A stretch of DNA of 64,000 nucleotides, taken from the NCBI RefSeq assembly GCF_003918875.1, contig NW_025765054.1:62001-126000 (forward strand), read 5' to 3'. Under the pieces are notes generated by a model. The model had not been told where the DNA came from and did no database searches. It saw only the letters and a list, made by a program, of their open reading frames with translations. The DNA comes from Haliotis rubra (Eukaryota). This document shows, piece after piece, positions 421-61,248 of the stretch. The position numbers and the translations under genes are program-made. Position 1 is the first letter of the stretch. Each line of letters opens with the position of its first letter.

Positions 421-660
421 ATCTTGGAAGAGACGGTCGTTAAGATCTCCATTAATCCAGCGCCCACTGTCAGTCCGAATGCTTCGACATCTTGGGATAA
501 GGGGCTCTTCATCCAGACCATTATGCTTGTTCCATCTGTTACTGTCGTAGCGAGCACTACGTCCCTGCGCCAGCCACTCGGGGTAGATCGTCACAGTTGT
601 GTTGCTCGAAACACTGCCAGTTGGTAGACTCAGTGTGAAAAGAAACAGTGTCCACTTCAT
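421..660 (-). CDS. GH86-like paralog copy 0, first coding exon only (signal peptide + N-terminus); rest of the gene lies before the window start
   Basis: ATG at 660, MKWTLFLFTLSL...RWNKHNGL...RTDSGRW...RLFQD, then donor GTGAGA at 420. Same 240-nt phase-0 exon as the other copies; CAG acceptor 3 nt upstream of the ATG. Confidence 0.85.
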
Positions 661-2780
661 CTTCTGTGATATGTAAAATTAACAATTTAATGATTTGATT
701 TTGGAGATTACAGTAACTGGGCTATCCATTAGAATGGGTAATCCCATTTCGTCATTCATTTTTACTAGGCCGCTACCCAAAAAGAATATCGTCTACGTCT
801 AAGTACAAGTGCAGCTACGTAATTAATTAATTGAGTACATTGATTTTCAAATGCTAAATAATCGTGACCTCGATAATTTCTGAACACTCTTAGATGAAAG
901 ATTATTACACTTTTCAATACATCCCCACAACTTTAATTACCAGTTTCAAAAACTCCAATCATGATAATAGAAATCCACTTGCATAGAAAATAGCTGTGAT
1001 TCAGAGTTCTAGTAGACATAAGAGCCTCTAGTACTGCTAGACGAGGTTCTTTCGCTCACTTTGCCAACAGATTGATTAATCATGGAAACCCTTGTACGTC
1101 ATGACATATATACACAGAAGGAAGGAAAATGTGTGTATATACTCACGAAAACGATTTCCCAAAAGTACCTTTGAATCAATGCTCTTTCGTTGCCCATGGC
1201 TGAATCAACACCTCAGTATATGTGTATCGTTAATATGCGTGTTTCCACAATCATTACCTATCGTTATGGTGACATCAGAAGATTCCAACTAAAGTCATGA
1301 TCACATGGCTCGGAACCGGTCTGTATTCTAGGTCAGCTATCTCTCAACCTATTGTTATTCTTTATTAAATGAATAAACGTTAGTACCTATTAATAATATG
1401 CATTAAGAAACAGATCAAGTGGGACGTTGTCACTTGACACACACGCTTGCTTGGAGATCATCTCAGGTTCAAATCGTAACTTTCGACATATTTTTAAAAA
1501 AGTTAACATTTTTAAAGGTCCAAATAAAGTACCTTAGGTATGAGTATACCTTCATTCTACAATGGCATGTTACATCAAACCATCCTTGTTGCAGAACTGC
1601 AGTCTTGATCCATTCTTTCTGGCACTTCAAGGCAGCAATCTCAAGTGCTAGACTTGCGATGCTATTCCACTATATAGGGATGCCACATCCATACGGTATC
1701 TATGAGACGGTATTTATTAGGGATATAATGTTTCATAACTAGGACAATAGCTTGGATGTTGAAAAGGCTGCTGACATAACGTTCCGATATTGGTGCAGGG
1801 AATATATCCCGGTTATATATGGGGAATAACGAATAGTTTCTAACAACAAAATTCCAACCTTTCAATATGTACCGTCACAAAACCAGGAGAAATACGACTT
1901 ATAGATTGCATCATGAGATTGGAAGATGTGAGAGAGAGTAATTTGTCAGATTCTTGGACTGACCGTTCGAAATTCTAGGTCATCAGTATTTATGCAGAAA
2001 ATGTTTGAATATCAAATTTGACACTATTTACGTAAGTAACTGCCATTGTGTACAACTGACAATATACCTACGTGAACTACACACCCTTGACCCTTTACGA
2101 TATCGTACGACATGTTTTTCTCACAGTATTGTGACTGTAGAGTGTTAATTTTAGACTAACAAAGCTTTGTCATTTTCAACATGTGAAATATAAATGTTTA
2201 AATGCCTGTATCCACAATGTGCTTCAACATAAAGTGACAAGCTGTAACTTTCACATAACGGATCAAAATATAAAGAAAATGGCTAGCAGTGCGGAATGGC
2301 GAGGTGAAATGTGGTTCAACGTTAACCGTGGGGAAATCAGTGAGTTAGCTGTATATTTTAATCTCATCTCATTTACCACTTCGTTATGCTCGGATATTTC
2401 ATCTAGTTGTGACAACATGCAAGAATCATCACTTTATAATGTGCTGGGAGAGAACTGATGGAAGATTATCAAGTCGTCCTTAAGAATACATAATGTGTTC
2501 ATTATCTGTCCTGTGGCACGTGTCAGTGTTGTAAATAAGTGTCCAAAAGCATCTTCAGGTCATAAGGAAACACCATTCCCCCAAAACATTATCCAATTTG
2601 TACTCAAACGCTGTAGGAGTTTAACAGTTAACTGGCATAAACATTGGTCTATAGCTGGCAAGCACCTGCCACCCAATACATTACTATTAACATATTTACA
2701 TGAACAACTAATATGCATGATACTTTATCACAGTCATGTTCTCTTTAATCAAATCAATGCAATGTTATTTCAGTATCTTA

Positions 2781-5530
2781 TCATTTTATGTCGGATGGGA
2801 CAAGTCTGGCAGCGACAAGAGCTACCGAAGTCACATAACCGTTCTCCTGGTTGGAGAAGTTAACCTGGACCTGGATAGAAGTAGAGTTCAACAAGTTAGG
2901 AGGATTCTCAAACTCCCAAACGTCCATGTTTGTATACATGTCACTGTTGTGTCTATCTGAGTCATACAGCTTGAAGAAGGAGTCAAGAGTTTGGTTGTTG
3001 AGGGTGACAGATTTCACATCGTTGGTTTCAGTAGTGAGCCAACTGGTTGAAACTCGCAGATTCGCGCTTTGGATTTCGCCAACCGGAAGTGATATGGTTG
3101 TAACAGCGATGTTGTCCTTGATAGGTATAATAACATCTGTTCCGTAATATGTCGTTTCATTGAGAGTGACTTTAGGTTGTTGGTCTGACGGGATCTTGAA
3201 TGTAAAGCGACATGTTGCTTCAGGAGGAAGTTCAACCATTCCTTGAGTTTTCCCGATGTCAATGGGTTCGTTGAAGGTCATGACCGGGTACCAGTTGTCC
3301 TTGATGGTGATACAAGTAGCTTCGCCCGTGGTCGGTGTGATCCAGTCGTCTTGGAAAATTAGCTTAACGGTTTGTGACTCTTGTGAATAGCTGTGAAGGA
3401 GAATGACGGTTTCATTCTTCAAAGGACTGGCCATTGCTAGCGGTGACACAGTTCGTTCTTGTCCGTCCGATTGGCTGGAGGTTCTGATGAAGGAGTACTC
3501 TGACGTAAAATTGTACCAAAACTTGAAAACGTCGACCAAACGTGTGGCATTCCCTTGCTGGGTGAAAAGTGAAAAGTTGAGACTGTCATGTCCTGACGTT
3601 GCTCGTTAGATAAACAAAACACCACTGTTCTATCAATGTATTCTCTGAGACCAAGTTGGGTGAATCGGTGGCCATTGATGCAATATATTGTTGAAAAATC
3701 GACTATACCCGATGGAGCATCTTTGCTAATACCTTCTACTTTCCCGCGACCATATTCACTGATAATGATGGGAATAGATTTTCCTTTCTTTCGATGGACA
3801 TAGCTTTCAAGGAGGTCGACAAATGCTACCAAACGGGCTTCATTATTTCCAGTGAATTTGTGAGTTTTCCCCGAAACAACTAGTGAGTTGTATGAATGAA
3901 AGGAAAATACATCTAACTCATCTAATGCGATGTCTAGAAACTGTACCAGTTTTGGCCAGAAGGAGAAGTTATTTCTGTCTACGTCTGTATTATACCCTGT
4001 CATTGTTGGACCCGCCACTTTGATGTTAAATCTGGAATGGAGTTTCTCAGCAACTGCTTTATGATAGACGCTAACAGTGGTGCTGAAATTCATGATGTCC
4101 CCTTTAACATCTGGTTCATTGACGACTTCAAAGTAGGGCGGTATCTGACCTTGTGTGTAGTCATAAACTCCTTGCACCATTAACATTATGAACTCTGCAG
4201 CAGCATCGACGTTGTTTGGGAAATGACCTTGATGTTCTGGCTGGTTCATCCAGTTGGGCCAATTAAGAGCTGAAAAATATGAATGAACAACACATGGATA
4301 CATACTGTTGCAGTGACGTTCTTCTTTTCATCGAAATGTACTCGAATTATAATAACGGATATGGATGCCTCCCGGACACTTATATTTATATCACATGTGC
4401 AGGAGTTTTTGGTGGAGTCCGGAAAATTTTCAAATATAAGAAAGCTGTTGGGTATTAGTAAATGATAAACATGTGTACTATTTATATTTCTGTGGCAGTT
4501 TTGTACAATGATCAAATTTGCAATTCATCGGTCCGTTTCTGACTCAAACGGACTGTATGTACCACCAGTACATTTCTTATCTTTGAGTGGCATTTTAGAA
4601 GTTGGGAAGTACTTTCCATAAAGTTTGTTCTATATAGTACATTTCTTTTTTTCAGGATGCACTTACATGTGGACACCATGATCATTTCGTTCTTGTACCC
4701 ACTGTTAATGTTGGCAAGATACGTGGAGAACAGTTCCTGTTGCTTGGTGACGTTCTTCAGGTAGTTCGGGTCTGGGTAGCCACTACGGTTAGGGTCCTGT
4801 GGCCACTACAAAATAAACGATTTCCATGGATGATTGTCACTGTCGATTTGCTAAAATTACATGTGTGGAAATACTAATGTAGATATTTCTAATCGTGTTT
4901 ATACGAAAAGAATGATTATACCATAGATACTTATTCACAAACAACATACACGTACAGATTCTAATAAATCTGAGCAATGTATTTCAAACACCACTGAATA
5001 TTCCTGCCAAATAACCAACCCAAACATGACCAACATCCATCCTTCAGTTAAATGTCTATCCAAGTAACAATGGATCAATGACTCCAATTAATAATATATA
5101 GATCGAAACAATATATCAATGCGATATGGTTTTACAGGGATAAATGGAAATTCAATGAAAAGAACATAATGTTATGCATGTAAAGTCAAAACAATATGTA
5201 ATGGTTATATTGTTATAATACAGCAAATCTGATTCAACATCTCGTTCTGCAAATGTTGCATACAGGCATACATAGGAACAAAAGTCTCACATCTAGAAAG
5301 AGATTATCATGTATATCTCTATTCATCCAGCGTCCGCTGTCAGTCCGAATACTGCGACAACATGGTATCAGGTATTCATGTTCCAGACCATTGTGCTTGC
5401 TCCATCTGTCAGGTTCATAGCGAACATTACCTCCCTTTGCCAGCCACTGAGGATAGATTGTCACAGTCGTGTTACTGTATACATTGGTTATCGATAGACT
5501 CAAAATGAAAACAACTGGCGTCCATCCCAT
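2781..5530 (-). pseudogene. GH86-like beta-porphyranase/agarase paralog copy 1, frameshifted
   Basis: Exons 5530-5291, 4805-4667, 4269-2781 with GT-AG ends. A 1-nt deletion near 3593 (cgt cag gac vs cgt caa gga c in copy 2) splits exon 3 into ORFs 3437-4303 and 2781-3539. Could be an assembly indel. Confidence 0.8.
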
Positions 5531-5589: not shown

Positions 5590-5640
5590 GTGTCTTATAG
5601 ATCAGACGTTTGCCGCTGATAAGATATCGCTGACCTTGCT
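5590..5640 (-). promoter_or_regulatory. Putative core promoter of copy 1 (TATA-like CTATAAG, GATA site, CAAGGTCA nuclear-receptor site)
   Basis: Plus strand cttatag 5594-5600, tgataag 5617-5623, tgaccttg ~5631-5638; same block upstream of copies 2 (~15005-15050) and 3 (~23650-23695). Confidence 0.45.
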
Positions 5641-12405: not shown

Positions 12406-14943
12406 TCATATCATTATGTCGGATGGGACAAGTCTGGCAGTAACAAGAGCTACCGAAGTCACATAACCGTTCTCCTGGTTGGAGAAGTTAACCTGGACCT
12501 GGATAGCAGTAGAGTTCAACAAGTTAGGAGGGACCTCAAACTCCCAAACGTCCATGTTGGTATACATGTCACTGTTGTGTCTATCTGAGTCATACAGCTT
12601 GAAGAAGGAGTCAAGAGTTTGGCCGTTGAGGGTAACAGATTTCACATCGTTGGTTTCAGTAGTGAGCCAACTGGTTGAAACTCGCAGATTCGCGCTTTGG
12701 AATTCGCCAACCGGAAGTGATATGGTTGTTACAGCGATGCTGTCCTTGATAGGTATAATAACATCTGTTCCGTAATATGTCGTTTCATTGAGAGTAACTT
12801 TAGGTTGTTGGTCTGATGGGATCTTGAATGTAAAGCGACATGTTGCTTCAGGAGGAAGTTCAACCATTCCTTGAGTTTTCCCGATGTCAAAGGGTTCGTT
12901 GAAGGTCATGACCGGGTACCAGTTGTCCTTGATGGTGATACAAGTAGCTTCGCCCATGGTCGGTGTGATCCAGTCGTCTTGGAAAATTAGCTTAACGGTT
13001 TGTGACTGTTGTGAATAGTTGTGAAGGAGAATGACGGTTTCATTCTTCAAAGGACTGGCCATTGCCAGCGGTGACACAGTTCGTTCCTGTCCGTCCGATT
13101 GGCTGGAGGTTCTGATGAAGGAGTACTCTGACGTGAAATCGTTCCAAAACTTGAAAACGTCGACCAAACGTGTGGCATTTCCTTGCTGGGTGAAAAGTGA
13201 CCAGTTGAGACTGTCATGTCCTTGACGTTGCTCGTTGGCTAACAAAAACACCACTGTTCTATCAATGTATTCTCTGAGACCAAGTTGGGTGAATCGGTGG
13301 CCATTGATGCAATATATTGTTGAAAAATCGACTATACCCGATGGAGCATCTTTGCTAATACCTTTTACTCCCCCGCGACCATATTCACTGATAATGATGG
13401 GAATAGATCTTCCCTTCTTTCGATGGACATAGCTTTCAAGGAGGTCGACAAATGCTACCAAACGGGCTTCATTATTTCCAGTGAATTTATGGGTTTTCCC
13501 CGAAACAACTAGAGAGTTGTATGAATGAAAGGAAAATACGTCTAATTGATCTAATGCGATGTCCAGAAACTGTACCAGTTTTGGCCAGAAGGAGAAGTTA
13601 TTTCTGTCTACGTCTGTATTATATCCTGTCATTGTTGGACCCGCCACTTTGATGTTAAATCTGGAATGGAGTTTCTCAGCAACTGCTTTATGGTAGATGC
13701 TGACAGTGGTGCTGAAGTTCATGATGTCCCCTTTAACATCTGGTTCATTGACGACTTCAAAGTAGGGCGGTATCTGACCTTGGGTGTAGTCATAAACTCC
13801 TTGCACCATTAACATAATGAACTCTGCAGCAGCATCTATGGTGTTTGGGAAATGACCTTGATGTTCTGACTGGTTCATCCAGTTGGGCCAGTTAAGAGCT
13901 GAAACATATGAATGAACAACACATTGATGCATACTGTTGGTGGGATGTTCTCCTTTTCATCGAAATGTACTCAGACATTTAATTACGGATATGGATACCT
14001 CCCAGACACTTACATTTATATCACATATAAGTACTGGTAAAGTTCTTGTTTTCAGGATGCATTTACATCTTGTCACCATGATCATTTCGTTCTTGTAACC
14101 ACTGTTAATGTTGGCAAGATAGGTGGAGAACAGTTCCTGTTGCTTGGTGACGTTCTTCAGGTAGTTCGGGTCTGGGTAGCCACTACGACTAGGGTCCTGT
14201 GGCCACTACAAAATAAACAATTTCGATGGATGATCGTCACTGACGATTAGATGAAAATAAGTTTGGCAATACTTATATAAATACATCTAATCGTGTTTAA
14301 ACAAAAAGAATGATTATACCAATGATACTTATTCACAAACAATATACACGTACAGATTGTAAAAAATCTTAGTAATTTAATTCAATCTAACTCAGTTCAA
14401 ACACTACTAGATATTCCTGCCACATAACCAACCTTATCCTTACCAGCGGTCATCCTTCAGTTAATGTCTATCCAAGCAAAAATGGATCAATGACTTCCAT
14501 TAATGATATATAGATCGAAACAATATATCAATTCGATAGGGCTTTACAGGGATAAATGGAAATCCAATTAAAAGTACATAGTGTTATGTATGTAAAGTGA
14601 ATACAATATGCAATGGTTATATTGTCATAATACAGCAAATCTGATTCAACATCTCGTTCTACAAATGTTGCATACACACATACATAGGAAAAAAAAGTCT
14701 CACATCTTGAAAGAGATTATCATTTAAATCTCTGTTCATCCAGCGTCCGCTGTCAGTCCGAATACTACGACAACTTGGTATCAGGTATTCATGTTCCAGA
14801 CCATTGTGCTTGCTCCATCTGTCAGGTTCATAGCGAACATTACCTCCCTTTGCCAGCCACTGAGGATAGATTGTCACAGTCGTGTTACTGTATACATTGC
14901 TTATTGATAGACTCAAAATGAAAACAACTGGCGTCCATTCCAT
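12406..14943 (-). CDS. GH86-like beta-porphyranase/beta-agarase paralog copy 2, intact, 623 aa, secreted
   Basis: Exons 14943-14704, 14205-14067, 13898-12406 (1872 nt, phases 0 and 1, GT-AG). Signal peptide MEWTPVVFILSLSISNVYS; acid/base NEP (E 13746-13744); nucleophile ISEYG (E 13386-13384). Confidence 0.9.
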
Positions 14944-41012: not shown

Positions 41013-41052
<40 letters not shown>

Positions 41053-42587
41053 GAGACACACATTTATCTGTGTGCTTGTATGTGTATGTCTTTGTTTTGT
41101 GACACATGTTTTGTGACACACGTACATACATACAAGTTAACTTCCCATTCGTCTGTATTGTTGCTAGGCAAAGACTACCGACGTCACCTTTCCAAACCAT
41201 CTTGACGGGGGAGAGTGAGTGAGTGATTTGAGTTTTACGCCGCACTCAGCAATATTCCAGCTATATGGCGGCGGTCTGTAAATAATCGAGTCTGGACCAG
41301 ACAAGCCAGTGATCAACAGCATGAGCATCGATCTGCGCAATTGGGATACGATGACATGTGTCAACCAAGTTAGCGAGCCTGACCACCCGATCCCGTTAGT
41401 CGCCTCTTACGACAAGCATGGGTTACTCAAGGTCGATATTCTAACCCGGACCTTTAGGGGTAATCTTGACGGGGGAGAATATACGGGAATAAGTTGGAGT
41501 AGAAAACAGGTATGTGTTGCTATTATTTTAGCATTAGCATTGAGACGAGACTCAAATCTGATTTGTAATTTACATGTAGACAATATTTCAAATGGTTTCA
41601 CAACGCCCACCAAGGTTGAAATCTCCTTCTGGGGAATACATTCATATCAATCTGGATTAGAGCTGGCTATGAGGTGAAACCTGCTATGAGGTGAAACAAA
41701 GGCTGAAACACGGGGCAATGTATGGAAACTGGAAGTTCACAGATAAAAGTTGCAGAGTTTAACATTGGCCTGACTTCGTACAAATGCGAGGTACGTGTTA
41801 CGAAAGCCTGGTGCTGCCACGTATGTAGCATTAAGTGCTTTTAATTGAAATGTATTGTTGTTTCAAGTTTTCTTCACTCTGCTTGAATTATTCTTTTTTT
41901 CCGCTATTTTCTCTGTTCACTTCAATTAGTGTCATGTTACTTCACGGTTCTTTTTTCAAGAATTTGAAATTTCGATTATTTTTACGTTATTTAAGTTTTT
42001 TCTTGCTGCTACGATTATTTTCTCGCTGGGTCGATTATATTCTCATTTCTCATTCGATTAATATTTCGAAGATTTTTATATTATATCAAGTTTCTTTCAC
42101 AAACTCGAACTTTTATATTTTTGAAAGTTGAAACAGTGAGAAAATAACTAAAGCAAACGGAAAATACTCGAAATTTCAAGTTTGTGAAAGGAACGAGTAA
42201 ATAATCATGTTTTACAAAAGATTTAATGTATCTCGAATTTATTTATCAATTTGTAAATCTGTTATTAGAAACTAATATATGTTACAAGTTTGAAACAGTA
42301 TACATGAGCTGGAAAGGAAAAAAATCAAATTAAATAGAAAATCTCACATCTTGGAAGAGTCGGTTACTATAATCTTCATGTATCCAGCGTCCACTGTCAG
42401 TCCCAAGGCTCCGACAGTCGGCCATTAGGGACTCCGGTTCAAGACCATTGTGCTTGTTCCACCTGTCAGTCTCATAGACAACACTACGTCCCTGTGCCAG
42501 CCACTGGGGATAAATCGTTAAAGTTGCGTCACTGTTTACACAATCTATTGCCAGGAACACGGCGAAAAAGACCAGTGTCAATTTCAT
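37765..42587 (-). CDS. GH86-like paralog copy 5, intact, 612 aa, secreted
   Basis: Exons 42587-42348, 40630-40492, 39224-37765 (1839 nt). Signal peptide MKLTLVFFAVFLAIDCVNS; PINEP, FSFHSY and ITEYG; 4-aa in-frame loop deletion (LLASEHDS). Confidence 0.9.
39430..40030. repeat. ~600-bp unclassified repeat, second copy at ~43050-43650
   Basis: Shared gctgatgaaaaaggaatcgtagtcagg...cacgggacactgctctga...gtacctttagagtcattgagggc...ccattttgtactgccattgtgatac. Confidence 0.8.
41014..41046. repeat. (CA)n microsatellite
   Basis: Perfect CA run; another at ~45144-45181. Confidence 0.95.
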
Positions 42588-44582: not shown

Positions 44583-44751
44583 NNNNNNNNNNNNNNNNNN
44601 NNNNNNNNNNNNNNNNNNNNNNNNNNNNNNNNNNNNNNNNNNNNNNNNNNNNNNNNNNNNNNNNNNNNNNNNNNNNNNNNNNNNNNNNNNNNNNNNNNNN
44701 NNNNNNNNNNNNNNNNNNNNNNNNNNNNNNNNNNNNNNNNNNNNNNNNNNN
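44583..44751. other. Assembly gap (169 N)
   Basis: Run of n between copies 5 and 6. Confidence 1.
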
Positions 44752-45140: not shown

Positions 45141-45183
<43 letters not shown>

Positions 45184-45410: not shown

Positions 45411-48400
45411 TCAATCTGATTGGATAAGCTTGCCTGTGACAAGAGCAACTGAAGAAACATATCCCGTAGTCATGCTGCTTGAGAAGTGGATCTGTACCTG
45501 GTTAGTCCCCGTTACAAACATGTAGGGAGGAACTACGAACTCCCAAACCTCCCAGTAAGTGGTACGGGCAAACTTGTCGGAGTCATACAGCTTGTGGAAA
45601 GCATCAAGGCGATGGCGGTTAAAGGAAAGGTATGATACACTGTTAGTTTCACTGATTAGCCAACTGGTTGAAACTCTCAGCCTGGCACTCTGATATTGTC
45701 CATTTGGTAGAGATATTACTGTCGAGACTACATTGCCGTTGATTGGTATGAGTGTGTCAGATCCGTAGTATGTGGTTTCGTTCAGTGTGGCACTAGGTAG
45801 CTGGTCTGATGGTGTCTTGAATGTAAAGTGACATGTTGCTTCTGGAGGCATATTTACAATTCCTTGGGTCTTCTGGATGTCGAACGACTCATTGAAGGTG
45901 ATGACTGGATACCAGTTATCCTTGATGGTGATACAAGTAGCTTCCCCCGAGGTTGGTTTGATCCAGTTATTTTCAAAGTCTAGTTTGACAGCCTGCGACT
46001 TCTGAGAATAGCTGTGCAAGAGAATGACTGTTTCGTTATCCAGTGGGCTAGACATTGCTAAGGGAGACACGGTTCGCTCCGCTCCATCATACTGGCTGGT
46101 AGTTCTGATAAAGGAGTATCCCGACATGAATTTGTACCAAAACTTGAAGACGTCGACTATGCGAGTGGCGTTTCCTTGAAGTGTGAAAAGTGACCAATTG
46201 AGACTATCATGTCCTGGGTATTTTTCGTTGGCTAAAAGAAACACCACTGCCCTGTCGATGTATTCCCTAAGACCCAGCTGAGTAAATCTGTGGGCATTTG
46301 CTTGGTATATCGTTGAAAAGTCAACTATTCCTGATGGGGCATATTTGTCAATTCCTGTCACAGGTCCGCGGCCATATTCACTGATAACAAGGGGGATAAT
46401 CTTTCCGGTTTTCTTAGAGGCATAGCTTTCAACAAGGTCGACGAATGCAACCAAGCGTGCCTCATTCATACCAGTAAGATTGTGAGATTTTCCAGAAACA
46501 ACGAGTGAATTGTACGAATGAAACGAAAAGACATCTATATATCCTAAAGTGACGTCCATGAAATCTGCCACTCTTTGCCAGTATGAAAAGTTGTATCTGT
46601 CCGACAATCCAGTTTCTCCATCGAGTGTTGGACCAGACACTTTGATGTTAAATCTGGAATGGAGTTTCTCAGCAACTGATTTATGAAACTTGGCAACGGT
46701 GGTGAAATTCAATATACGCCCTTTACCATCCGGTTCATTTATTGACTCAAAGTAGTGTGGTATTTGTCCCTTTGTGTAGTCATAAACTCCCTGCACCATC
46801 AACATCATGAACTCTGCAGCAGCATCGACATCGTTCGGAAACTGACCTATATGTTCAGACGTGTTTATCCAACTCGGCCAATAAAGACCTGTAAAATATT
46901 ATAATTTTTGTATGAATTTGGCAATGGCTGAAATAAAACGGTTTGACAAGGTCTGGAATAGAAGAATGTTACTGTCAAAGAATTAATGACGCGGAATATA
47001 TCAGTCAGAGAAAGAAAAAATAATGCTGATGAAGAAAACGACCCTTTCAAACATTGACGTGGCTTTTTTGTCGATCGTTCCGGTAAGATTACATTATATT
47101 TTTTGTGTGGTGTTTAAAGAAAGAACATTCCAGTATTCATTATAATTTGTTGTTTTAATGTAGGTTATCACATTTAGTATTTCTATGAAAGCATTTTACA
47201 ATAATTATTTTGTTTCAAGAATGAACGATAATAACAGCACCAAATGTTTTTAGGTCAGTGAATAAAAATTCAACAAAAACATTAACTATATTTAGGTAAG
47301 TTTCTTTTTAAAATCAACTTTGAGTCACATTGTCGACTGCCTTTTGGTGGAACACTAACGTGATAGGGAGACACGATACATCTGCTTTCTTGACTCATCC
47401 TCATCAAGGATGGGTTTCAATCCTTATAGGGTGGTAAGTGTTATATATGTGACAGGCAAAGATAGTTATTTTGATTAATTGCTTATTGTCTGGCAAATAA
47501 GGTCCCTTATGAGTGAGTGAGTGAGTTGGGCTTTACGCCGCTTTTACCAATATTCCAGCAATAACACGCATTGTGCCCATGTGGGGAATCGAACCCGTGT
47601 TTTCTGCATAAAAAGCGAACGCTTTACCCGCTATGAGTAGGAACAGTTTTTGATGAACTCTACACATCATAACAACTTGCTCAGTAATCGGTGGCCTATA
47701 GTTTCCCCAAAATGTAGGTAAGTGTAAGGGACACGTGAAAGCACTTCTCAACTCTGAATATTTTAAAAATGATGTAAAGAGATTGTATCCTTGCGTATTT
47801 CCGTATCGTTCACATTTGATTTCGGGAAATTTATGGAATATGTTTGTTGTTTATAGCAACCTTCAGCAATATCTAAGCTCCATAACGATGGTCAGCAAAT
47901 AATAGGGTTTTGTTCAGAATAACTAGTGGTTGTAATTATGAGAAATGGCCAGCGTGAAAAACTGATTCGCATCATACGATATAGACCGCCTTGTGGAACA
48001 ACAGGCAAACATAGCAAAATCTCTAAAACGCAAGTTCAGGTTCACATTAAGATATTTTGACTTTACCACAACGTTGGTTATTACTGATGGTTTTATACAT
48101 GATTGGGACGATGACCAACAGTGGGCTGTGTTCTCCCAGAGTGCTCTAATGGGGAAGACCCGTGAAAATCCGGGCTAGAAATCATCTTCAGTAACCCATG
48201 GTTGTCGTAAGAGGCGACAACGGCATCGGGTGGTCAGGCTCGCTGGCTTGGTTGACACATGTCATCGTATCCCAATTACGTAGGTTGATGCACATGCTGT
48301 TGATCACTGGATTGTCTGGTCCAGACTCTATTATTTACAGACCGCCGTCACATAGATGAGTGCGGTGTAAAACTAAACTCACTCACTTACTCTAATGGGG

Positions 48401-50867
48401 AAACATGTTCTTGTCCCAAATAGAAAACTCTTACCTCCTGCCATCATTATCATGTCATTTTCATAGCCACTGTTGATGTTCTCAACGTAACTGGAGAACA
48501 TTTTCTGCTGAAAGGTGACGTTCTTCAGATGGTTGGGATCAGGGTAGCCACTACGGTTTGGGTCCTCTGGCCACTGCAATCAATAATTATCTATATCCTC
48601 AGGGCTAACAGTTTGGTACGTTTTCACTAACCCCTCAAATCACCAACCCTTGACTTCCAGTTTGATTATCTACACTACTATACTGAACCACTATAGAAAT
48701 GTCGTACCGATAGCAGTTTCTTAAAGCACACACTTTAATTCACTGTTCTTAACAATCAACACGGAGGACTGAGTTCAAACTTGGTTAACACATTTTCGGG
48801 AATCACATATAGAGTTAACACAAACAACATCACCAAAAATGGTGCCATTAAGATACCCCAAAGTCAGTATTATGTGTGGCCTCCATGGGCATCGATGAAA
48901 GCGTTGCATCGTCTGTACATGAAATCAATTAGCCGGTTGCTGAAGGCCATAGGCTCTTGTGTCCATACTCTTTGAAATGCCTGATCGAGTCCAGCTGCAA
49001 TTGTCGGCCTTGGTTGGAGGTCATTCAGTCTTCTTTGAAGCTCGTCCCAAAGGTGTTCTATTGGACTTAAAATCCGGACTGAGTGCAGGCTATTGCAGGG
49101 TGTTTTTAGGCCATGTTGTTTTGGAAGTCAAATTTTGCTCTGGCAGTGTGGGCACGAGCGTTGTCTTGCTGCAAGTTGTGAATTCTGTAACGTACAAAAT
49201 TTGGTACAACGTGGGGTGTGATGACTTGGTCAATATAGCGAGCAGCTGTCACGTCATTTCTTCATCCTGGACCAAGATTCTGGAACTCAACGGTGTCAAC
49301 TAACTGGTTCAGACCGAATGCACCCCACACCGTGATGCTTGGACCACACCAAGTGTCTCTTTCAATGGTACACTCATTGGAAAACAGTTCCCCATGCCTT
49401 CACCATATCACTCTGCCATCGACTGTCGAAACACAACATCGGCTTTCATGAGATAAAAGCACAGTTCTCCATTGTCGATAACGCCAATGTTAATGCTGAG
49501 TTGTCCATTGCAGTCGGTTTGGGCGGTAATGAGCTGTGAGGACAGGACCACGATACGGTCTTTGACAGCAGAGATTTTTTCTGCGCAAACGTCGACGCAC
49601 TGTATCGGCACTGATGGGTCTGTTGTGAGTCCCAATGGTCTGGCATACTGTTTCAATCGCTCTGGGCGATCTTGCAGATGGTTGCGCACAATCTGTCGGT
49701 CTTGACTTTGTGATGTTACTGGAGGTCGCCCACTGCGTGGACGGTCTTGGATGCTGTTAGTCACCTGATACCTCTCCTGCAGTCGGTACATTGTCCTTAC
49801 ATGAACATTAAAATGATTGGCTCCCCTCCGTGCAGCCTGAACAACTTGCAATCGTCCAAAGACTTGGTTCCTCGGATCTCTCGTAAGTCGTGGCATGGTG
49901 ATTGTATCAAAACAAAATTGATTTCAGGCGAGTTTGGGACTTGCTTTCATATATAAGCATCTTTCCAGTAATAAACCAGCCTCGACGCTGAGATGGAAAT
50001 ATGAGCAGCCTGACGGCAAGTACTGTTACTTATTATGGAGTTTTCGAGAACTCAATACTAAAGAACCAAGTGACATGAAAAGAACATCTTCATAATTTCT
50101 CTTTGATGGAGGGCGGTGGGGTAGCCTAGTGTTTAAAGCGTTCGCTCGTCACGCCGAAGGCCCGGGTTCGATTCCCCACATGGGTACAATTTGTGAAGCC
50201 CATTTCTGGTGTGCCCCGCCGTGATATTGCTGGAATATTGCTAAAAGCGGCGTACAACCATACTCAGTCAGTCAGTCTTTGATGGTATTGGTACCCAGTG
50301 GTATTGGATACGAATTACCTCCCTTGCCCATCCCCTTTCCAAGTTGTCCAAGTAAGATAGCCTGGTTTAAAGATCAAGGATGTATGCAAGGTAATTTGCG
50401 AAGAACTACGGGAATGGAACCAGGGGCTAGTGTAGGTTTAATGTTAACAGCAAAGTATCACCTCATTCGTGTAGGACACCGTATTCCTGTAAGGGTTACA
50501 CTAAATCAATGTTTCCATTACATTGTCGCCATCACTGGCGTTTGATAATGTCAAATTTGTTTTTAACAGTGCTAGTGACAGCTTTCAGTGGCATTGATAT
50601 TTAGTATTATACGTTGGTTGTTCTCACGTCTTGGAAGAGACGATCGTTAAGATCTCTGTTATTCCAGCGCCCAGCGTCAGTCCCAATGCTCCGACATTTG
50701 GGGATGAGAGTTGTCTTATCTAGACCATTGTGCTTGTTCCATCTATTGCTGTCATAGCGAGCGCTTCCTCCCTGTGCCAGCCATTGAGGGTGGATTGTGA
50801 CAGTTGTGTCATTGTATACTCCGCCCACTGTCAAGCACAGAGTGAAAATGACCTGTGTCCACTTCAT
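45411..50867 (-). CDS. GH86-like paralog copy 6, intact, 618 aa, secreted
   Basis: Exons 50867-50628, 48573-48435, 46888-45411 (1857 nt). Signal peptide MKWTQVIFTLCLTVGGVYN; SINEP, FSFHSY and ISEYG. Confidence 0.9.
48712..49960 (-). mobile_element. Tc1/mariner element with frameshifted transposase (49896-48864) in intron 1 of copy 6
   Basis: MPRLTR...DRPRSGRP; QQDNARAH and SPDLSPIEHLW motifs; ends GGHT.Y*. Same family as 55756-57228. Confidence 0.85.
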
Positions 50868-55755: not shown

Positions 55756-57228
55756 TACTGAACCGCAAACGAAACGTCACCTCCAAAACCAAATTTTGTT
55801 CTCACAAGGTGGTGTTTTTATTATGATTGTACCGTTTTGTTAAAGTGTGTTTCACTCCAAATGGATAGTCATTACCAACATTAGTGTGTTTTCTGATGAA
55901 AAGGCATATCGACTAAACGCACCTAAAAAGGCAGACGTGATAAAAGGTACCTTATGACATTCGTGAAAATGAACATGCACGTACATATCGTGACAACCCT
56001 ACCAATGAAAGCGAGTCTCAAACTCGCCTGAAATTATTCTTGTTTGACACAACCACCATGCCAGGAGTTACGAGAGATCAGGGGAACCAAGCCTCGGGAC
56101 GATTGCAAGTTTGCCAGAATGCAGGGAAGGTAGCCAATCATTTTAATGTTCATGTTGGGACAATCTACCGACTGAATGCGGTTTCAGGCCACTAACAGCA
56201 TCCAAGACCTTCAGTAACATCACAAAGTCAAGACCGACAGATTGTACGCAACCATCAGCAGGATCGCTTCACCAGAAGGACGGAAGCAGCACGCCAGACC
56301 ATTGGGACTCACAACAGACCCATTAGTGCAGTAACAGTGCGTCGACGTTTGCGCGGAAGAAACCTGTGCTGTCGCAGACCATATCGTGATCCTGTCCTCG
56401 CCGCTCGTCACTGCCCAAACCGACTGCAATGGGCGACTCAGCATCGAAATTGGCGTTATTGACAATGGAGAACTGTGATAAAATTCGATATTGTGTTTCG
56501 ACAGCCGATGGCATAGTGAGAGTATGGCGAAGGCGTGGGGAACGGTTTTCCAAAGAGTGTATTGTTGAAAGAGACTCGTGGGGTGGTCCAAGCATCACTG
56601 TGTGGGGTCGATCGGCCTGAACCAGAGAGTTGGCCCCATGTTCGGTCCAGGACGAGGAAATAGCGTGACAGCTGCTCACTATATTGATCAAGTCATAAGA
56701 CCCCACGTTGTACCACATGTTGGACGTCACAGAAAACACATCTTCGAGCACGATAACGCTCGTGGCCACACTGCCAGAGCAACATTGGACTTCGTAAGAC
56801 AAAATGGCATCCAAACCCTACTACTGCCTGCACTCAGTCCGGATTTAAGTAAAAAAGAACACCTTTGGGACGAAATTCAAAGAAGACTGAATGACCTCCA
56901 ACCATGGCCGACAACTGCGGCTAGACTCAATCAGACATTTTGCTCAGTATGGACCCCAGTGCCTATGGCCTTCAGCAAGCGGCTAATTCATTCCATGTAC
57001 AGACGATGCAACGCCGTCATCGATGCCCATGGAGGCCACACACGATACTGACTTTGAGGTATCATAATGGTACCATTTTGGTGATTTTGTTTGTGTGAAT
57101 ACTAACCATAGGTAACCATAATTGTCAAGTTTGAACTCAATCCTCCGTTTTGATTGTAAATTAGAGCGAATGAAAGTGTGTGCTTTAAGAAACCAATATC
57201 AGTATGGCGTTTCTTTTGCTGTTCAGCA
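55756..57228 (+). mobile_element. Near full-length Tc1/mariner element with pseudogenised transposase (56058-57051)
   Basis: Imperfect TIRs tactgaaccgcaaacgaaacgtca / tggcgtttcttttgctgttcagca flanked by TA; FEHDNARGH, SPDLSKKEHLW and GGHTRY*. Confidence 0.88.
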
Positions 57229-57397
57229 TATTAGTTTAGTAACACGATTCAATCCAAAGAGAACCATTGCAGGTGTTGCAATTTTGTTTTATTACCTGGG
57301 TAACAACGACATAACACTCATTAATGGAACAAATTTAATCATATCAAATTTGAGGTATTTCTCAGCATCCATATCATTATTAAGACTTCAAATCAGA

Positions 57398-60300
57398 TTA
57401 CACAAGTTTGCCTGTGACAAGGGCAACTGACGAAACATATCCCACTGCCATGTTGTTTGAGAAATGAACCTGTACCCGGTTAGCCCCTGTGACGAACAGG
57501 GAGGTAGGGACTGCAAACTCCCAAACCTCCCAGTAAGTGGTACGGGCAAACTTGTCCGAGTCATACAGCTTGTGGAATGAATGTAGGCGATGGTGGTTGA
57601 AAGCAAGGTATGACACACTGTTAGTTTCACTGATCGGCCAACTGGTTGAAACTCTCAGCCTGGCACTTTGATATTGACCATTTGGTAGAGATATTACTGT
57701 CGAGACTACATTGCTTTTGATTGGTATGAGTGTATCAGATCCGTAGTATGTGGTTTCGTCGAGTGTGGTACTGGGTAGTTGGTCTGATGGTGTCTTGAAT
57801 GTAAAGTGGCACGTTGCTTCTGGAGGAAGGCTTACAATTCCTTGGGTCTTCTGAATGTCGAAGGGTTCGTTGAAGGTGATAACTGGATACCAGTCATCCT
57901 TGATGGTGATACAAGTAGCTTCTCCCGAGGTTGGTTTCATCCAGTTATTTTCAAAGTCTAGTTTGACAGCCTGCGACTTCTGAGAATAGCTGTGCAAGAG
58001 AATGACTGTTTCGTTATCCAGTGGGCTTGCCATTGCTAAGGGAGACACGGTTCGCTCCGCTCCATCATACAGGCTGGTAGTTCTGATAAAGGAGTATCCC
58101 GACATGAATTTGTACCAAAACTTGAAGACGTCGACCATACGAGTGGCATTGCCTTGAAGTGTGAAAAGTGACCAATTGAGACTATCATGTCCTGGATATT
58201 TTTCGTTGGCTATAAGAAACACCACTGTTCTGTCGATGTATTCCCTGAGACCAAGTTGGGTAAATCTGTGGGCATTGGAGTGGTATATCGTTGAAAAGTC
58301 AACTATACCTGATGGAGCATATTTGTCAACTCCTGTGACCTTATCGCGACCATATTCACTGATAACAAGAGGAATAATCTTTCCGGTCTTCTGGGAGGCA
58401 TAGTTTTCAACAAGGTCGACAAATGCTACGAGACGTGCTTCATTCATTCCAGTTAGATTGTGAGATTTCCCCGATACGATAAGGGAGTTGTATGAATGGA
58501 ATGAAAATACATCTATATATCCTAAATTGGTGTCCATGAAATTTGCCACATTTTGCTAATACGAAAAGTTGTTTCGATCCGACAATCCAGTTTCTCCGTC
58601 GAGTGTTGGACCAGACACTTTGATGTTAAATCTGGAATGGAGTTTCTCAGCAACTGATTTGTGAAACTTGGCAACGGTGGTGAAGTTCATTATACGCCCT
58701 TTACCATCCGGTTCATTTATAGGCTCAAGATAGTGTGGTATTTGTCCCTTTGTGTAGTCATAAACTCCCTGCACCATCAACATCATGAACTCTGCAGCAG
58801 CATCGACATCGTTCGGAAACTGACCTATATGCTCAGACGTGTTTATCCAACTCGGCCAATAAAGACCTGTAAATAACATGAGAGCAAACCCGTTATACTG
58901 ATGATATTTTTAATGATTCTAATTTCCAATTTTATTGAAACGAAGGGTTTCGAAAGCATTTGAAACATCATAGCGTATGAGGCATGGAGTGAGGGGAAAA
59001 TATAGTCCCATCAGAATTCGTACAGCCACATCGTCACTATCAAATGTTTTACTTCTAAACTATGTAGAAATCTGTGAAGACGAGACATAATCATAACTAG
59101 ATATCACAGACATATTCAGAACTGGTGTTTAACCAAAATGACATCACTTAAACTAGGGACATATTGTATTTATGTATTGTACTGTAACATTGTATTTATG
59201 TATTGTATTGTAAGATTGTATTGTATTTATGTATTGTATTGTAACATGTATTTAGGTATTGTATTGTAACGTTGTATTTATGTTTTATAACATGCCGTAT
59301 TTATATATTGTAACATTGTATGTATGTATTGCAATTTAACATTGTACGTATGAGTGAGTGAGTTTAGTTTTACACCGCACTCAGCAATATTCCAGCTATA
59401 TAGCGGCGGTCTGTAAATAATCGAGTCTGGGCCAGACAATCCAGTGATCAACAGCATGAGCATAAATCTGCGCAATTGGGTACCGATGACATGTGTCAAC
59501 CAAGTCAGCGAGCCTGACCACCCGATCCCGTTAGTAGTCTCTTACGACAAGCATGGGTTGCTGAAGACCAATTCTACCCCCGATCTTCACGGGTCTTGTA
59601 CTTATGTATTATGTTGTACCATATTGTATTTATGTATTGTATTGTAACATATTGTATTTATGTAACATATTGTATTTATGTATTGTATTGTAACATATTG
59701 TATTTATGTATTGTAACATGTTGTTTTATGTATTGTATTGTAACATATTGTATTTATGTATCGTATTGTAACATATTGTATTTATGTATTGTATTGTAAC
59801 ATATTGTATTTATGATACCATAATGAAACCTCGGCATTATTTACACCATCCCTCCACCAGCTGGCTGTTATCGGCGAGTTTCGCATAAATCTTAGACTGT
59901 TGTGAACGAAATAATAATGCCATGGTCAGGGTCATGGTCACCTCAGTCGATTTTTCTAAAGAGCGGGGATTTATTGCTTTCATTTTGTTTATAAAGAAGC
60001 ACAGTCAAAATATAATATCTTGTGAGAGTAAAATATGTATTTCATGACATCATGCTATTGGTGCGTATTCTAAAAATTCGTGTTTTTGACCGTACTTCTC
60101 CTAATATCCTTATTCCTTGAATATGGAATTAAGTATTCGTGGAGTTTGTTTGTTTAACCGGCAGTGGGGTCATGTCGAGCCATTTCACTAATGACCTTGG
60201 CCACAAGATAGAGCAAATGGTCCAAGTGACGCGTGCAAGAAGAATCCCAATGAAAAACCACACTAAACACACGTAACTTGTTTTTTGGTTTGTTTTCACC

Positions 60301-61248
60301 GATCCTGCTTCGTTCCGCCCCGTCTACAATGTCATCATATCGATCATTCTTACCTCCCGCCATCATGATCATGTCGTTCTCGTAACCACTTTTAATGTTC
60401 TCAACGTACTTGGAGAACATTTGGTGTTGCATGGTGACGTTCTTCAGGTGGTTGGGGTCAGGGTAGCCACTACGGTTTGGGTCCTCTGGCCACTGCAATC
60501 AATATACGTATTGCATTAGTAGAATTATGTTATACCTTGTGCCATTCGTCAAAGCCTTTTAGCACAGATATGTACTCTCTCACACACTGTTTTGCCAGGA
60601 ACTGATGTATTTACTCATATTGTGAACTTAAGAGAATACACCACTAGGACACTGGGAACTATTAACCAAAATTTCAAAATAATGGTGTTTTCAAATTAAA
60701 TTTGTGCTTTCCTTCTTAGGAGGATATAAAATACTTATAAAAATGTTTATAACCTAGATACTTTTCCGGTTTGACTAAAGTACTTAGCACAGTACTTGAT
60801 TTTACTCTTGTTGATGACCGTTTCAGTTCAATCTGAAGAGATGGTGCTAATCATATTTGTGTAATGGCTGCGTTAAATGAATATATATATATATATAATA
60901 ACTTCATCATGATATCATTGTCAAATACAGTTCTGAAAAATACTGGGGCCAGGTTTTATTACGAAGTCCATGTTAGTATCGTTCATTGGTTGTTCTCACG
61001 TCTTGGAAGAGACGATCGTTAAGATCTCTGTTATTCCAGCGCCCAGCGTCAGTCCCAATGCTCCGACATTTGGGGATGAGAGATGCCCGATCAAGACTAT
61101 TGTGCTTGTTCCATCTATTGCTGTCATAGCGAGCGCTTCCTCCCTGTGCCAGCCATTGAGGGTGGATCGTCACAGTTGTGTCACTGTATAGGCCACGGAC
61201 ACCGCCAACTGTCAGACTCAGAATGAAAAAGACCTGTGTCCATTTCAT
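57398..61248 (-). pseudogene. GH86-like paralog copy 7 with a single nonsense mutation
   Basis: Exons 61248-61000, 60492-60354, 58866-57398. TGG>TAG at 58558-58556 (NFSY*QNV vs NFSYWQRV in copy 6); frame otherwise open. Confidence 0.85.
59160..59813. repeat. AT-rich minisatellite (~28-bp unit tattgtattgtaacatattgtatttatg) split by a SINE-like copy at 59351-59595
   Basis: Direct tandem units on both sides of the insertion, in intron 2 of copy 7. Confidence 0.85.

What the first reader, a model, noticed from the sequence alone, without database searches (positions are those of the whole stretch)
421..61248. Tandem array of eight intron-containing, secreted GH86-like porphyranase/agarase genes in an animal genome: a candidate horizontally acquired red-seaweed digestion system
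Seen: eight same-strand paralogs with matching GT-AG exon structure, signal peptides and clan GH-A catalytic motifs (NEP acid/base, FSFHSY, (I/V)I(S/T)EYG nucleophile), set among animal transposons. Knowledge: this motif order with N-terminal EDPxRxGYxDP and C-terminal LPPEAT...ETxYY...AxLR...VxNG...E..VP...GxVSSVxL is, as I recall it, that of bacterial GH86 beta-porphyranases/agarases (Bacteroides plebeius porphyranase A type with BPA_C domain). I know of no biochemically characterised animal-encoded GH86. Inference: an algivorous mollusc acquired the gene from marine bacteria and amplified it, so it could digest agar/porphyran without relying on gut microbes.
Basis: partly seen in the sequence, partly recalled or inferred. 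Interest (0 to 1): 0.95.

Follow-up and report, generated by a model that had tools for sequence, protein, structure and literature searches.

The report
Abalone's own GH86 seaweed-galactan enzyme genes
An abalone chromosome carries a tandem row of its own intron-containing genes for secreted GH86 enzymes, a family otherwise known from marine and gut bacteria that cut red-seaweed agar and porphyran; mussels, a pearl oyster and a chiton carry the same family, so molluscs probably acquired it very long ago.

Summary
On the minus strand lie seven full-length three-exon paralogs plus exon 1 of an eighth at the window's left edge. Four are intact (623, 623, 612 and 618 aa). Three are broken as assembled (frameshifts or premature stops). 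The N gap (44583-44751) is intergenic and touches no exon.

GH86 membership is well supported. A profile of the mollusc proteins hits only GH86 structures in the PDB (E 1e-37, full length). An AlphaFold model (pLDDT 91.6) matches all solved GH86 structures at TM about 0.8 and nothing else above about 0.47. Both catalytic Glu are conserved.

The interpretation needs correcting. This is not a recent acquisition by an algivorous snail. The family also occurs in Mytilus, Pinctada and the chiton Liolophura, and all mollusc copies form one clade (100/100). Both N-terminal introns sit at identical positions and phases in gastropod, bivalve and chiton. The intron-bearing gene therefore predates the split of these classes.

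NCBI pipelines already name the orthologs 'beta-porphyranase A-like'. I found no paper on an animal GH86. Substrate and digestive expression remain untested, and the bacterial donor is unresolved.

The parts
421..660 (-). c0: exon 1 only (signal peptide plus the N-terminal 80 aa) of an eighth paralog; exons 2 and 3 lie beyond the left edge of the window
   Evidence: ATG at 660, donor GAT|GTGAGA after 421.
2781..5530 (-). c1: full-length paralog, disrupted. Exons 5530-5291, 4805-4667, 4269-2781
   Evidence: 96% nt identity to c2 in exon 3; a 1-bp deletion near 3594 shifts the frame, giving a premature stop at 3439-3437.
12406..14943 (-). c2: intact 623-aa gene. Exons 14943-14704, 14205-14067, 13898-12406 (an alternative upstream in-frame ATG is at 14979)
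   Evidence: The best homolog is a H. asinina 'beta-porphyranase A-like' protein at 90% identity. Exons are covered and intron 2 is empty in three public runs.
20752..23586 (-). c3: pseudogene. Exons 23586-23347, 22943-22805, 22243-20752
   Evidence: TAG in exon 2 at 22901-22899; a +1 G near 21719 and a -2 bp deletion near 21525 in exon 3.
31662..35488 (-). c4: intact 623-aa gene. Exons 35488-35249, 34396-34258, 33154-31662
   Evidence: It pairs with H. rufescens P0003 in the tree.
37765..42587 (-). c5: intact 612-aa gene. Exons 42587-42348, 40630-40492, 39224-37765
   Evidence: The nucleophile motif is VITEYG and the acid/base motif is INEPD.
44583..44751 (.). Assembly gap (169 N) between c5 and c6; intergenic
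   Evidence: 659 bp below the c6 stop and 1995 bp above the c5 ATG. No GH86-like exon abuts it. Its content was not examined or filled.
45411..50867 (-). c6: intact 618-aa gene. Exons 50867-50628, 48573-48435, 46888-45411; intron 1 holds a transposon copy
   Evidence: The same runs hold 27-36% of the exon-3 words.
57398..61248 (-). c7: full-length paralog with one premature stop. Exons 61248-61000, 60492-60354, 58866-57398
   Evidence: TAG at 58558-58556 where the paralogs have Trp; otherwise 90% nt identity to c6 exon 3.
48666..49950 (.). Tc1/mariner-like DNA transposon copy inside c6 intron 1
   Evidence: inverted repeat, 81% alike, of 56005-57242; weak HTH_32/HTH_29 hits for ORF 49408-49896.
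56005..57242 (.). Second copy of the same transposon, downstream of c7
   Evidence: ORF 56578-57051 hits Pfam DDE_3 at 1.6e-10.

Best explanation
The window is part of a large tandem array of endogenous GH86 glycoside hydrolase genes in a Haliotis (abalone) genome.

**Protein (partly shown, partly inferred).** Each functional copy encodes a roughly 620-aa secreted protein with 12-14 N-glycosylation sequons. It has a signal peptide, a clan GH-A (beta/alpha)8 barrel and two C-terminal Ig-like beta-sandwich domains. By homology it is a retaining endo-beta-galactanase using double displacement. The Glu of the NEP motif would be the acid/base. The Glu of the (I/V)I(S/T)EYG motif would be the nucleophile; it aligns with E322 of BuGH86.

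**Substrate (inferred).** The most likely substrates are agaran-type red-algal galactans (agarose, porphyran, funoran) in the gut lumen.

**History.** The family entered the mollusc lineage once, most probably by transfer from a marine microbe. This happened before chitons, bivalves and gastropods diverged, and the gene gained its two N-terminal introns before that divergence. Abalones then expanded it by birth-and-death tandem duplication. In the window this gives old paralogs under purifying selection, plus young duplicates (c1, c3, c7) that are decaying.

**Shown here:** gene structures, GH86 homology and fold, conserved catalytic residues, mollusc monophyly, shared introns, purifying selection.

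**Inferred:** secretion, substrate, tissue of expression, and the direction and donor of the transfer.
For: **GH86 identity**
- phmmer of exon 3 hits only GH86 chains (8h97 1.5e-9, 4aw7 4.5e-8).
- A 12-sequence mollusc profile hits only GH86 chains, over positions 73-607 of 613 (5ta1 1.6e-37, 8h97 9e-37, 4aw7 1e-27).
- The AlphaFold2 model of the 90%-identical ortholog has pLDDT 91.6 and pTM 0.90.
- Its seven best Foldseek PDB hits are all from the GH86 entries, TM 0.73-0.81. The next hits (GH30, GH39 and similar) have query-normalised TM of at most 0.47.
- The NEP Glu is invariant and the SEYG Glu is nearly invariant across 50 mollusc, bacterial and protist sequences.
- The SEYG Glu aligns with the ISEY Glu of BuGH86, whose E322Q mutant is the nucleophile mutant (PMC5849685).

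**Host origin**
- GT-AG introns, GC 0.33-0.46, a DDE_3 transposon inside an intron.
- Orthologs lie on 63-76 Mb contigs of four Haliotis species.

**Selection**
- dN/dS is 0.17-0.23 and dS 0.76-1.25 among the four intact paralogs.

**Age**
- Homologs occur in Mytilus (five species), Pinctada and Liolophura.
- The 24 mollusc rows form one clade with 100/100 support (100 SH-aLRT).
- Introns 1 and 2 fall in the same alignment columns (79 and 126) and phases (0 and 1) in window c2, an old Haliotis paralog, the chiton and the mussel.

**Distribution**
- An exhaustive profile search of 1.84 billion representatives found 552 clusters. Scores run 964-505 bits for the near-full-length mollusc or mollusc-like clusters, and 281-225 bits for three short or chimeric Mytilus-type fragments. 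All others score 190 bits or less. No other animal phylum was identified.

**Expression (suggestive)**
- Three runs of about 1-1.5 Gb cover the c2 exons at word depth about 100-250 (X1), with zero depth over intron 2. They also hold c6 exon 3 words.
Against: - There is no biochemical evidence for any animal GH86.
- Identity to characterised enzymes is only about 16-24%, so the substrate cannot be read from sequence.
- The family is present in filter-feeding mussels and a pearl oyster, which does not fit a purely red-macroalga role.
- Pfam's GH86-specific domains are below threshold or absent on the window copies. Porphyrn_cat_1 scores 16 bits against a cut-off of 27, and BPA_C gives no hit.
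- Read evidence is weak. The run type is only guessed, contigs differ by 2-3% from the window, part of intron 1 is covered, and no contig shows the splice junctions.
- Three of seven in-window copies are broken.
- The tree is unrooted, so nesting inside bacteria is not shown.
- The sister group consists of three long-branch sequences from protist data sets.
Confidence: 0.75

Rival explanations
1. The genes are true GH86 descendants, but in molluscs they act on a different substrate. Candidates are microalgal or detrital sulfated galactans, other beta-galactans, or endogenous glycans. On this reading the red-seaweed digestion story is wrong or covers only part of the family.
For: - The family occurs in the filter feeders Mytilus and Pinctada.
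- A long stem branch (0.74-0.79) separates the mollusc clade from all characterised enzymes.
- Identity to solved GH86 structures is only 16-18%.
- GH86 specificity is set by a few residues at the -2 subsite that differ even between agarase and porphyranase (PMC5849685).
- Deeply diverged paralog subfamilies exist within Haliotis.
Against: - Every characterised GH86 named by the sources acts on agaran-type galactans: agarase, porphyranase, funoran hydrolase (names).
- The largest expansion seen is in abalones, which are algal grazers, and chitons are grazers as well (the diets are my own knowledge, not tested here).
Confidence: 0.2
2. A recent horizontal transfer from marine bacteria into the abalone lineage, followed by amplification.
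For: - GH86 is overwhelmingly microbial.
- The family is missing from most annotated animals.
- The array sits among mobile elements.
Against: - All mollusc sequences form one clade, including chiton and bivalve sequences.
- Intron positions and phases are identical across three classes.
- The window paralogs already differ by dS about 0.8-1.2, and each pairs with an ortholog in another Haliotis species.
Confidence: 0.03
3. GH86 is an old eukaryotic gene, or was passed between eukaryotes, rather than a direct bacterium-to-mollusc transfer. On this reading molluscs inherited or received it from a protist-type lineage.
For: - The sister group of the mollusc clade (97/97) is three sequences from protist data sets: the foraminifer Bolivina argentea, a cluster containing a Picozoa single-cell genome protein, and one unnamed EukProt entry.
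- AlphaFold DB also holds GH86-fold entries with A0A7S-type accessions, which look like protist-transcriptome entries (my reading of the accession series; the organism field was blank).
Against: - These rows have long branches and deviant composition.
- The only genomic contig examined for that cluster (L003) has prokaryote-like gene spacing and GC 0.54-0.61. Contamination of the protist data sets by bacteria is therefore plausible.
- No other animal phylum was found.
Confidence: 0.12
4. Assembly contamination, or a set of dead relics with no function.
For: Three of seven copies carry frameshifts or stops.
Against: - Four copies have complete ORFs with dN/dS about 0.2 and conserved catalytic residues.
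- Orthologs are retained in four other Haliotis genomes.
- Introns and transposons exclude bacterial contamination.
- Exon-restricted coverage at high depth in small runs suggests expression.
Confidence: 0.02

Closest known systems
Bacterial GH86 beta-agarases and beta-porphyranases with solved structures: BuGH86 of Bacteroides uniformis (5TA0/5TA1/5TA5), Aga86A_Wa (8H97), BpGH86A of Bacteroides plebeius (4AW7)
   Same: - Full-length homology, with profile E-values of 1e-37 to 1e-27.
- The same three-domain fold, a (beta/alpha)8 barrel plus two Ig-like domains, at TM 0.73-0.81 (fold described in PMC5849685).
- Conserved motifs: EDPxRxGYxDP, NEP (acid/base), HxY and SEY (nucleophile), and the C-terminal GG(Y/H)VSSV motif.
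   Different: - Only about 16-24% identity.
- Encoded in an animal nucleus with two spliceosomal introns, a eukaryotic signal peptide and 12-14 N-glycosylation sequons.
- No CBM, Ig-like or lipoprotein extensions of the kind many bacterial members carry (lengths).
- Arranged as a paralog array, not as part of a polysaccharide utilisation locus.
- Substrate untested.
RefSeq and UniProt auto-annotated 'beta-porphyranase A-like', 'beta-agarase-like' and 'funoran endo-beta-hydrolase-like' proteins of Haliotis asinina, H. rufescens, H. cracherodii, H. rubra, Mytilus spp., Pinctada imbricata and Liolophura sinensis
   Same: - The same family, and for the Haliotis entries orthologs of the window copies (90% identity for c2).
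- The same three-exon structure.
- Tandem arrangement in H. asinina: a second, partial copy lies upstream of the gene.
   Different: - These are pipeline names only.
- None of the papers found describes or tests them.
- The window's own species is not among the annotated sources.
Endogenous polysaccharide-degrading enzymes of marine molluscs, for example the GH45 cellulases of red abalone and the sea hare Aplysia kurodai (PMC11025796, PMC4123733; titles and abstracts only)
   Same: Animal-encoded, secreted digestive carbohydrases of herbivorous molluscs. The PMC4123733 text mentions horizontal gene transfer (term counts; I did not read the passage).
   Different: A different GH family, fold and substrate (cellulose). 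Those enzymes have been purified and assayed; the GH86 proteins have not.

Membership tests
CAZy family GH86 | Significant sequence similarity over the catalytic module to characterised GH86 members, and to no other GH family at comparable level | tested here: met
   the only PDB sequences matched are GH86 (5ta1 1.6e-37, 8h97 9.1e-37, 5ta0 1.3e-36, 4aw7 1.2e-27), covering profile positions 73-607 of 613.
CAZy family GH86 | Fold: (beta/alpha)8 barrel followed by two Ig-like beta-sandwich domains | tested here: met
   The model has pLDDT 91.6. Foldseek ranks 1-7 are all GH86 chains at TM 0.73-0.81, and the next families have query-normalised TM of at most 0.47. The fold is described in PMC5849685. 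The model is of the H. asinina ortholog, 90% identical to c2, not of the window protein itself.
CAZy family GH86 | Clan GH-A catalytic pair: acid/base Glu in NEP, and a nucleophile Glu equivalent to BuGH86 E322 | tested here: met
   The motifs are present in all seven catalytic exons. E189 is invariant and E309 nearly invariant in the 50-sequence alignment. The IISEYG Glu aligns with the ISEY Glu of 5ta1 (SEQRES residue 325, native 322 by my count after allowing for the tag).
CAZy family GH86 | Pfam GH86-associated domains BPA_C (PF18040) and Porphyrn_cat_1 (PF18206) above the gathering score | tested here: inconclusive
   Window exon 3 translations give Porphyrn_cat_1 at 16 bits (cut-off 27) and no BPA_C hit. 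Precomputed hits to both exist on more distant Haliotis paralogs, Mytilus and Liolophura proteins.
CAZy family GH86 | Match to the dbCAN or CAZy GH86 HMM | not testable with these tools
   No dbCAN library is available here.
CAZy family GH86 | Endo-beta-1,4 hydrolysis of agarose, porphyran or funoran | not testable with these tools
   This needs recombinant enzyme assays.
Horizontally acquired gene resident in an animal genome | Physically integrated in host DNA: introns, host repeats, conserved chromosomal locus | tested here: met
Horizontally acquired gene resident in an animal genome | Patchy distribution: absent from other animal phyla, abundant in microbes | tested here: met
   In one search only mollusc or mollusc-like clusters score above 190 bits. 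Source names identify Haliotis, Mytilus, Pinctada and Liolophura. Limits: only the best 150 of 552 clusters were listed, and only annotated proteins were searched. Unannotated genomes were not.
Horizontally acquired gene resident in an animal genome | Phylogenetic nesting of the animal clade inside the donor group | tested here: inconclusive
   The trees are unrooted. The mollusc clade (100/100) joins three long-branch sequences from protist data sets (97/97), and these join a pair that includes a Rubellicoccus (bacterial) protein. No donor is resolved.

The most novel reading that the evidence does not exclude
Molluscs have carried a functional, endogenous GH86 agaran hydrolase since before chitons, bivalves and gastropods split, from a single very ancient transfer. 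Abalones have expanded it to several dozen secreted paralogs in tandem arrays. They can therefore depolymerise agar, porphyran or funoran themselves rather than relying on gut bacteria. This would be the first animal GH86 and an unrecognised animal route for red-algal carbon.
Probability: 0.45. Interest if true: 0.8.

Novelty: new member of a known kind. Interest (0 to 1): 0.62.

Why it matters
**Why it would matter**
- Breakdown of red-algal agars is attributed to bacteria. The abalone microbiome paper I consulted attributes GH16, GH86 and GH117 capacity to gut Polaribacter (PMC5870069).
- A host-encoded, expanded and selectively maintained GH86 family would change how digestion in abalone is understood. 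Abalone is a major aquaculture animal.
- It would add an ancient, phylum-wide case to the short list of foreign carbohydrases in animals.
- It would offer eukaryote-expressed, glycosylated agarases or porphyranases for biotechnology.

**What tempers this**
- The genes are already visible in public annotation under a correct family name.
- The function remains untested.

Tried and rejected
- **Pfam on single window exons.** It gave only weak clan-level hits (Cellulase 6e-5, Porphyrn_cat_1 0.019). I relied on profile and fold searches instead.
- **Scan of bacterial and archaeal genome contigs with the mollusc profile.** It found nothing, because the back-translated patterns were mollusc-specific.
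- **Read evidence.** The three runs found are of guessed type. The Logan contigs are short and 2-3% divergent, show no contig across either splice junction, and give one non-canonical joint (14224 to 14693). This counts only as suggestive expression. The first attempt at the second run search failed as busy.
- **Literature.** Nine searches were made. One was badly formed and uninformative. None found an animal GH86 report. The H. iris genome preprint and the metazoan HGT compendium do not mention it.
- **Specificity residues.** I tried to map the -2 subsite residues of BuGH86 and BpGH86A (T82/M396 versus F77/S326) onto the mollusc proteins from the HMM alignment. T82 falls outside the aligned region and M396 could not be placed consistently, so I make no specificity call.
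- **Origin of the protist-data-set relatives.** NCBIfam on the neighbours in L003 gave nothing. Only gene density and GC hint at a prokaryote.
- **Rejected explanations.** Bacterial contamination, GH39/GH30/GH79-type animal families, and recent abalone-specific HGT (see rivals).

Full report
**1. What is in the window**

All long ORFs related to the finding lie on the minus strand. tblastn with the 508-aa ORF of copy 2 finds seven catalytic exons, at about 2.8-4.3, 12.4-13.9, 20.8-22.3, 31.7-33.2, 37.8-39.2, 45.4-46.9 and 57.4-58.9 kb.

A full-length Haliotis asinina homolog (P0001) served as a guide. With it, two small upstream exons are found for each copy. An eighth exon 1 lies at 660-421, and the rest of that copy is off the left edge.

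The splice sites are canonical and positionally identical:
- Exon 1 ends in phase 0 before GTGAGA.
- Exon 2 begins after (T/C)AG with TGG CC(A).
- Exon 2 ends in phase 1 before GTAAG, GTGAG or GTAAA.
- Exon 3 begins after (C/T)AG.

The spliced reading frames are as follows:

| Copy | Result |
|---|---|
| c2 | intact, 623 aa |
| c4 | intact, 623 aa |
| c5 | intact, 612 aa |
| c6 | intact, 618 aa |
| c1 | 1-bp deletion in exon 3 |
| c3 | TAG in exon 2 plus two frame-shifting indels in exon 3 |
| c7 | one TAG replacing a conserved Trp |

The assembly gap at 44583-44751 lies between genes. It is 659 bp past the c6 stop and 1995 bp before the c5 ATG, and it abuts no GH86-like exon. I did not try to fill it.

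**2. Host setting**

- GC content is 0.33-0.46.
- A Tc1/mariner-like element (Pfam DDE_3, 1.6e-10) is present in two inverted copies. One lies inside intron 1 of c6.
- Self-comparison shows that duplication is mostly confined to gene bodies. c1, c2 and c3 are 92-95% identical, introns included. c6 and c7 are about 90% identical. The remaining pairs are 76-79% identical.
- Among the four intact paralogs, dS is 0.76-1.25 and dN/dS is 0.17-0.23. These are old duplicates under purifying selection, alongside young duplicates that are decaying. That is a birth-and-death pattern.
- Each intact protein has 12-14 N-x-S/T sequons.
- Each has an N-terminal hydrophobic core followed by a small-residue cleavage-like site. 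This is a heuristic only.

**3. What the proteins are**

- Single-sequence phmmer against PDB sequences hits only GH86 enzymes (8h97 1.5e-9, 4aw7 4.5e-8, 5ta1 and 5ta0 about 1e-7).
- A profile of 12 mollusc proteins hits the same four sequences and nothing else, across positions 73-607 of 613 (1.6e-37 to 1.2e-27). The aligned region includes the N-terminal EDPxRxGYxDP motif and the C-terminal GG(Y/H)VSSV motif.
- An AlphaFold2 model of P0001 (90% identical to c2), built on a 50-sequence alignment, has mean pLDDT 91.6 and pTM 0.90.
- The first seven Foldseek PDB matches all come from the GH86 entries (5TA5, 5TA0, 5TA1, 8H97, 4AW7), with TM 0.73-0.81. Other clan GH-A families follow with query-normalised TM of at most 0.47.
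- Pluvinage et al. [quoted passage not shown] The mollusc (I/V)I(S/T)EYG Glu aligns with that residue.
- The NEP Glu is invariant across the 50 aligned mollusc, bacterial and protist sequences.
- Pfam's own GH86-linked models are sub-threshold on the window copies. They do hit other members of the mollusc family.

I therefore file the genes as GH86 by sequence, fold and catalytic residues. Activity is untested.

**4. Where else the family occurs**

The word-indexed search returned 80 Haliotis proteins from H. asinina, H. rufescens, H. cracherodii and H. rubra. Many lie on the same 63-76 Mb contig within each species, and others lie on different large contigs. It also returned chiton (Liolophura sinensis) proteins. 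Most are already named 'beta-porphyranase A-like', 'beta-agarase-like' or 'funoran endo-beta-hydrolase-like' by NCBI.

No row in either homolog search was marked as encoded by the window. The window species is therefore a further Haliotis whose annotation is not in the collection.

The exhaustive profile search of 1.84 billion representatives found 552 clusters. Scores fall into three bands:
- 964-505 bits for eight near-full-length mollusc or mollusc-like clusters.
- 281-225 bits for three short or chimeric Mytilus-type fragments.
- 190 bits or less for everything else.

Cluster look-ups and a second homolog search add five Mytilus species and Pinctada imbricata. No other animal phylum was identified.

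H. asinina alone contributes more than 30 clusters at 90% identity (my count).

First-reader notes on the same genome mention further GH86 arrays on other pieces, and one copy with Ala at the nucleophile position. I did not check these.

**5. Age and origin**

A careful maximum-likelihood tree was built (57 rows, LG+C20+F+G4 PMSF).
- All 24 mollusc rows form one clade at 100/100 on a stem of 0.74.
- Window c2, c4 and c5 each pair with a specific ortholog in another Haliotis species (c6 with weaker support). The paralogs therefore predate Haliotis speciation. A 99-row quick tree agrees.

I solved the exon structures exactly for the chiton gene (L001), the Mytilus edulis gene (L002) and an early-branching Haliotis paralog (L004).
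- In a four-way protein alignment, intron 1 falls at column 79 in phase 0 in all four.
- Intron 2 falls at column 126 in phase 1 in all four.
- The old Haliotis paralog has one extra intron.

Shared introns across Polyplacophora, Bivalvia and Gastropoda mean the gene was already an intron-bearing nuclear gene in their common ancestor. This contradicts a recent transfer into an algivorous snail.

The donor is unresolved.
- The sister of the mollusc clade (97/97) is three long-branch sequences from protist data sets: Bolivina argentea, a cluster that includes a Picozoa single-cell genome protein, and one unnamed EukProt entry.
- The one contig I could read for that cluster has prokaryote-like gene spacing and GC 0.54-0.61.
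- AlphaFold DB also holds GH86-fold entries that look transcriptome-derived.
- The trees are unrooted, so 'nested within bacteria' is not demonstrated.

Transfer from a microbe remains the most economical reading. The family is abundant in microbes and, among animals, was found only in molluscs.

**6. Expression**

Three public runs of 1.1-1.5 Gb hold 23-28% of the sampled words of the c2 locus and 27-36% of those of c6 exon 3.

Laid on 12000-15400, their contigs behave as follows:
- In run X1, exon 3, exon 2 and exon 1 are covered at word depths of roughly 100-250.
- The bin inside intron 2 and the first part of intron 1 have zero depth.
- The second half of intron 1 is covered at lower depth.

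Such depth in runs this small cannot come from genomic DNA of a gigabase-sized genome (the genome size is my own knowledge), so I infer RNA.

The caveats are that the run type is only guessed, the contigs differ by 2-3% from the window, and no contig spans a splice junction. This is suggestive evidence, not proof. The tissue is unknown.

**7. Literature**

Full-text searches found only bacterial GH86 work. They combined GH86, porphyranase or agarase with abalone, Haliotis, mollusc terms or horizontal transfer, and included the phrase 'porphyranase A-like'.
- The H. tuberculata microbiome paper attributes GH86 capacity to gut bacteria (PMC5870069).
- A recent abalone genome preprint and a compendium of metazoan HGTs do not mention the family.
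- Subscription-only papers are outside the library, so prior description cannot be excluded.

**8. Verdict**

- The genes are on the minus strand.
- Four copies are intact, three are broken, and one is cut by the window edge.

The GH86 assignment is right. The evolutionary story should be changed to an ancient, mollusc-wide gene family that is strongly expanded in abalone. The donor is unresolved and the substrate unproven. The presence of the family in filter feeders keeps a non-seaweed substrate plausible.

As a family the genes are known, and they are already auto-annotated in sister species. As an animal enzyme system they appear undescribed and are readily testable.

Noticed in passing
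window 48666-49950 and 56005-57242: Two inverted copies, 81% alike, of a Tc1/mariner-like DNA transposon (Pfam DDE_3 at 1.6e-10; weak HTH_32/HTH_29). One copy sits inside intron 1 of GH86 copy c6.
   Followed up: partly
window 5636-6529 (+): A 297-aa ORF between c1 and c2 with no Pfam hit. It looks like the C-terminal tail of a retroelement ORF.
   Followed up: no
window 12000-12340: Word depth of 1e4 to 5e5 in runs X1-X3, with many conflicting joints. This indicates a very high-copy repeat immediately downstream of c2.
   Followed up: no
L002 1-2610 (Mytilus edulis): A carbohydrate sulfotransferase gene (Sulfotransfer_1) lies about 5 kb upstream of the mussel GH86 gene. A M. coruscus gene model named CHST1 (P0090) fuses sulfotransferase and GH86 exons. 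This could be coincidence, a mis-annotation, or a functional neighbourhood for sulfated glycans.
   Followed up: no
L004 6001-11211 (Haliotis cracherodii, P0084): An early-branching Haliotis GH86 paralog keeps the two shared N-terminal introns. It has a third intron, phase 2, after residue 352 inside what is a single large exon in the window copies.
   Followed up: yes
P0093, P0110, P0158/P0242; L003: The nearest non-mollusc relatives come from protist data sets: the foraminifer Bolivina argentea, a Picozoa single-cell genome, and one unnamed EukProt entry. The one readable contig has prokaryote-like gene density, and its GH86 protein carries a C-terminal stretch resembling the start of GH3-type beta-xylosidases. 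Whether they are eukaryotic or contaminants is open.
   Followed up: partly
same genome, other pieces (notes s1-335031, s1-320397, s1-339707, s1-323647, s1-339781): First-reader notes report further GH86 arrays and single genes elsewhere in this genome, and one copy with Ala at the nucleophile position. This fits the multi-locus family seen in other Haliotis species, but I did not check it.
   Followed up: no
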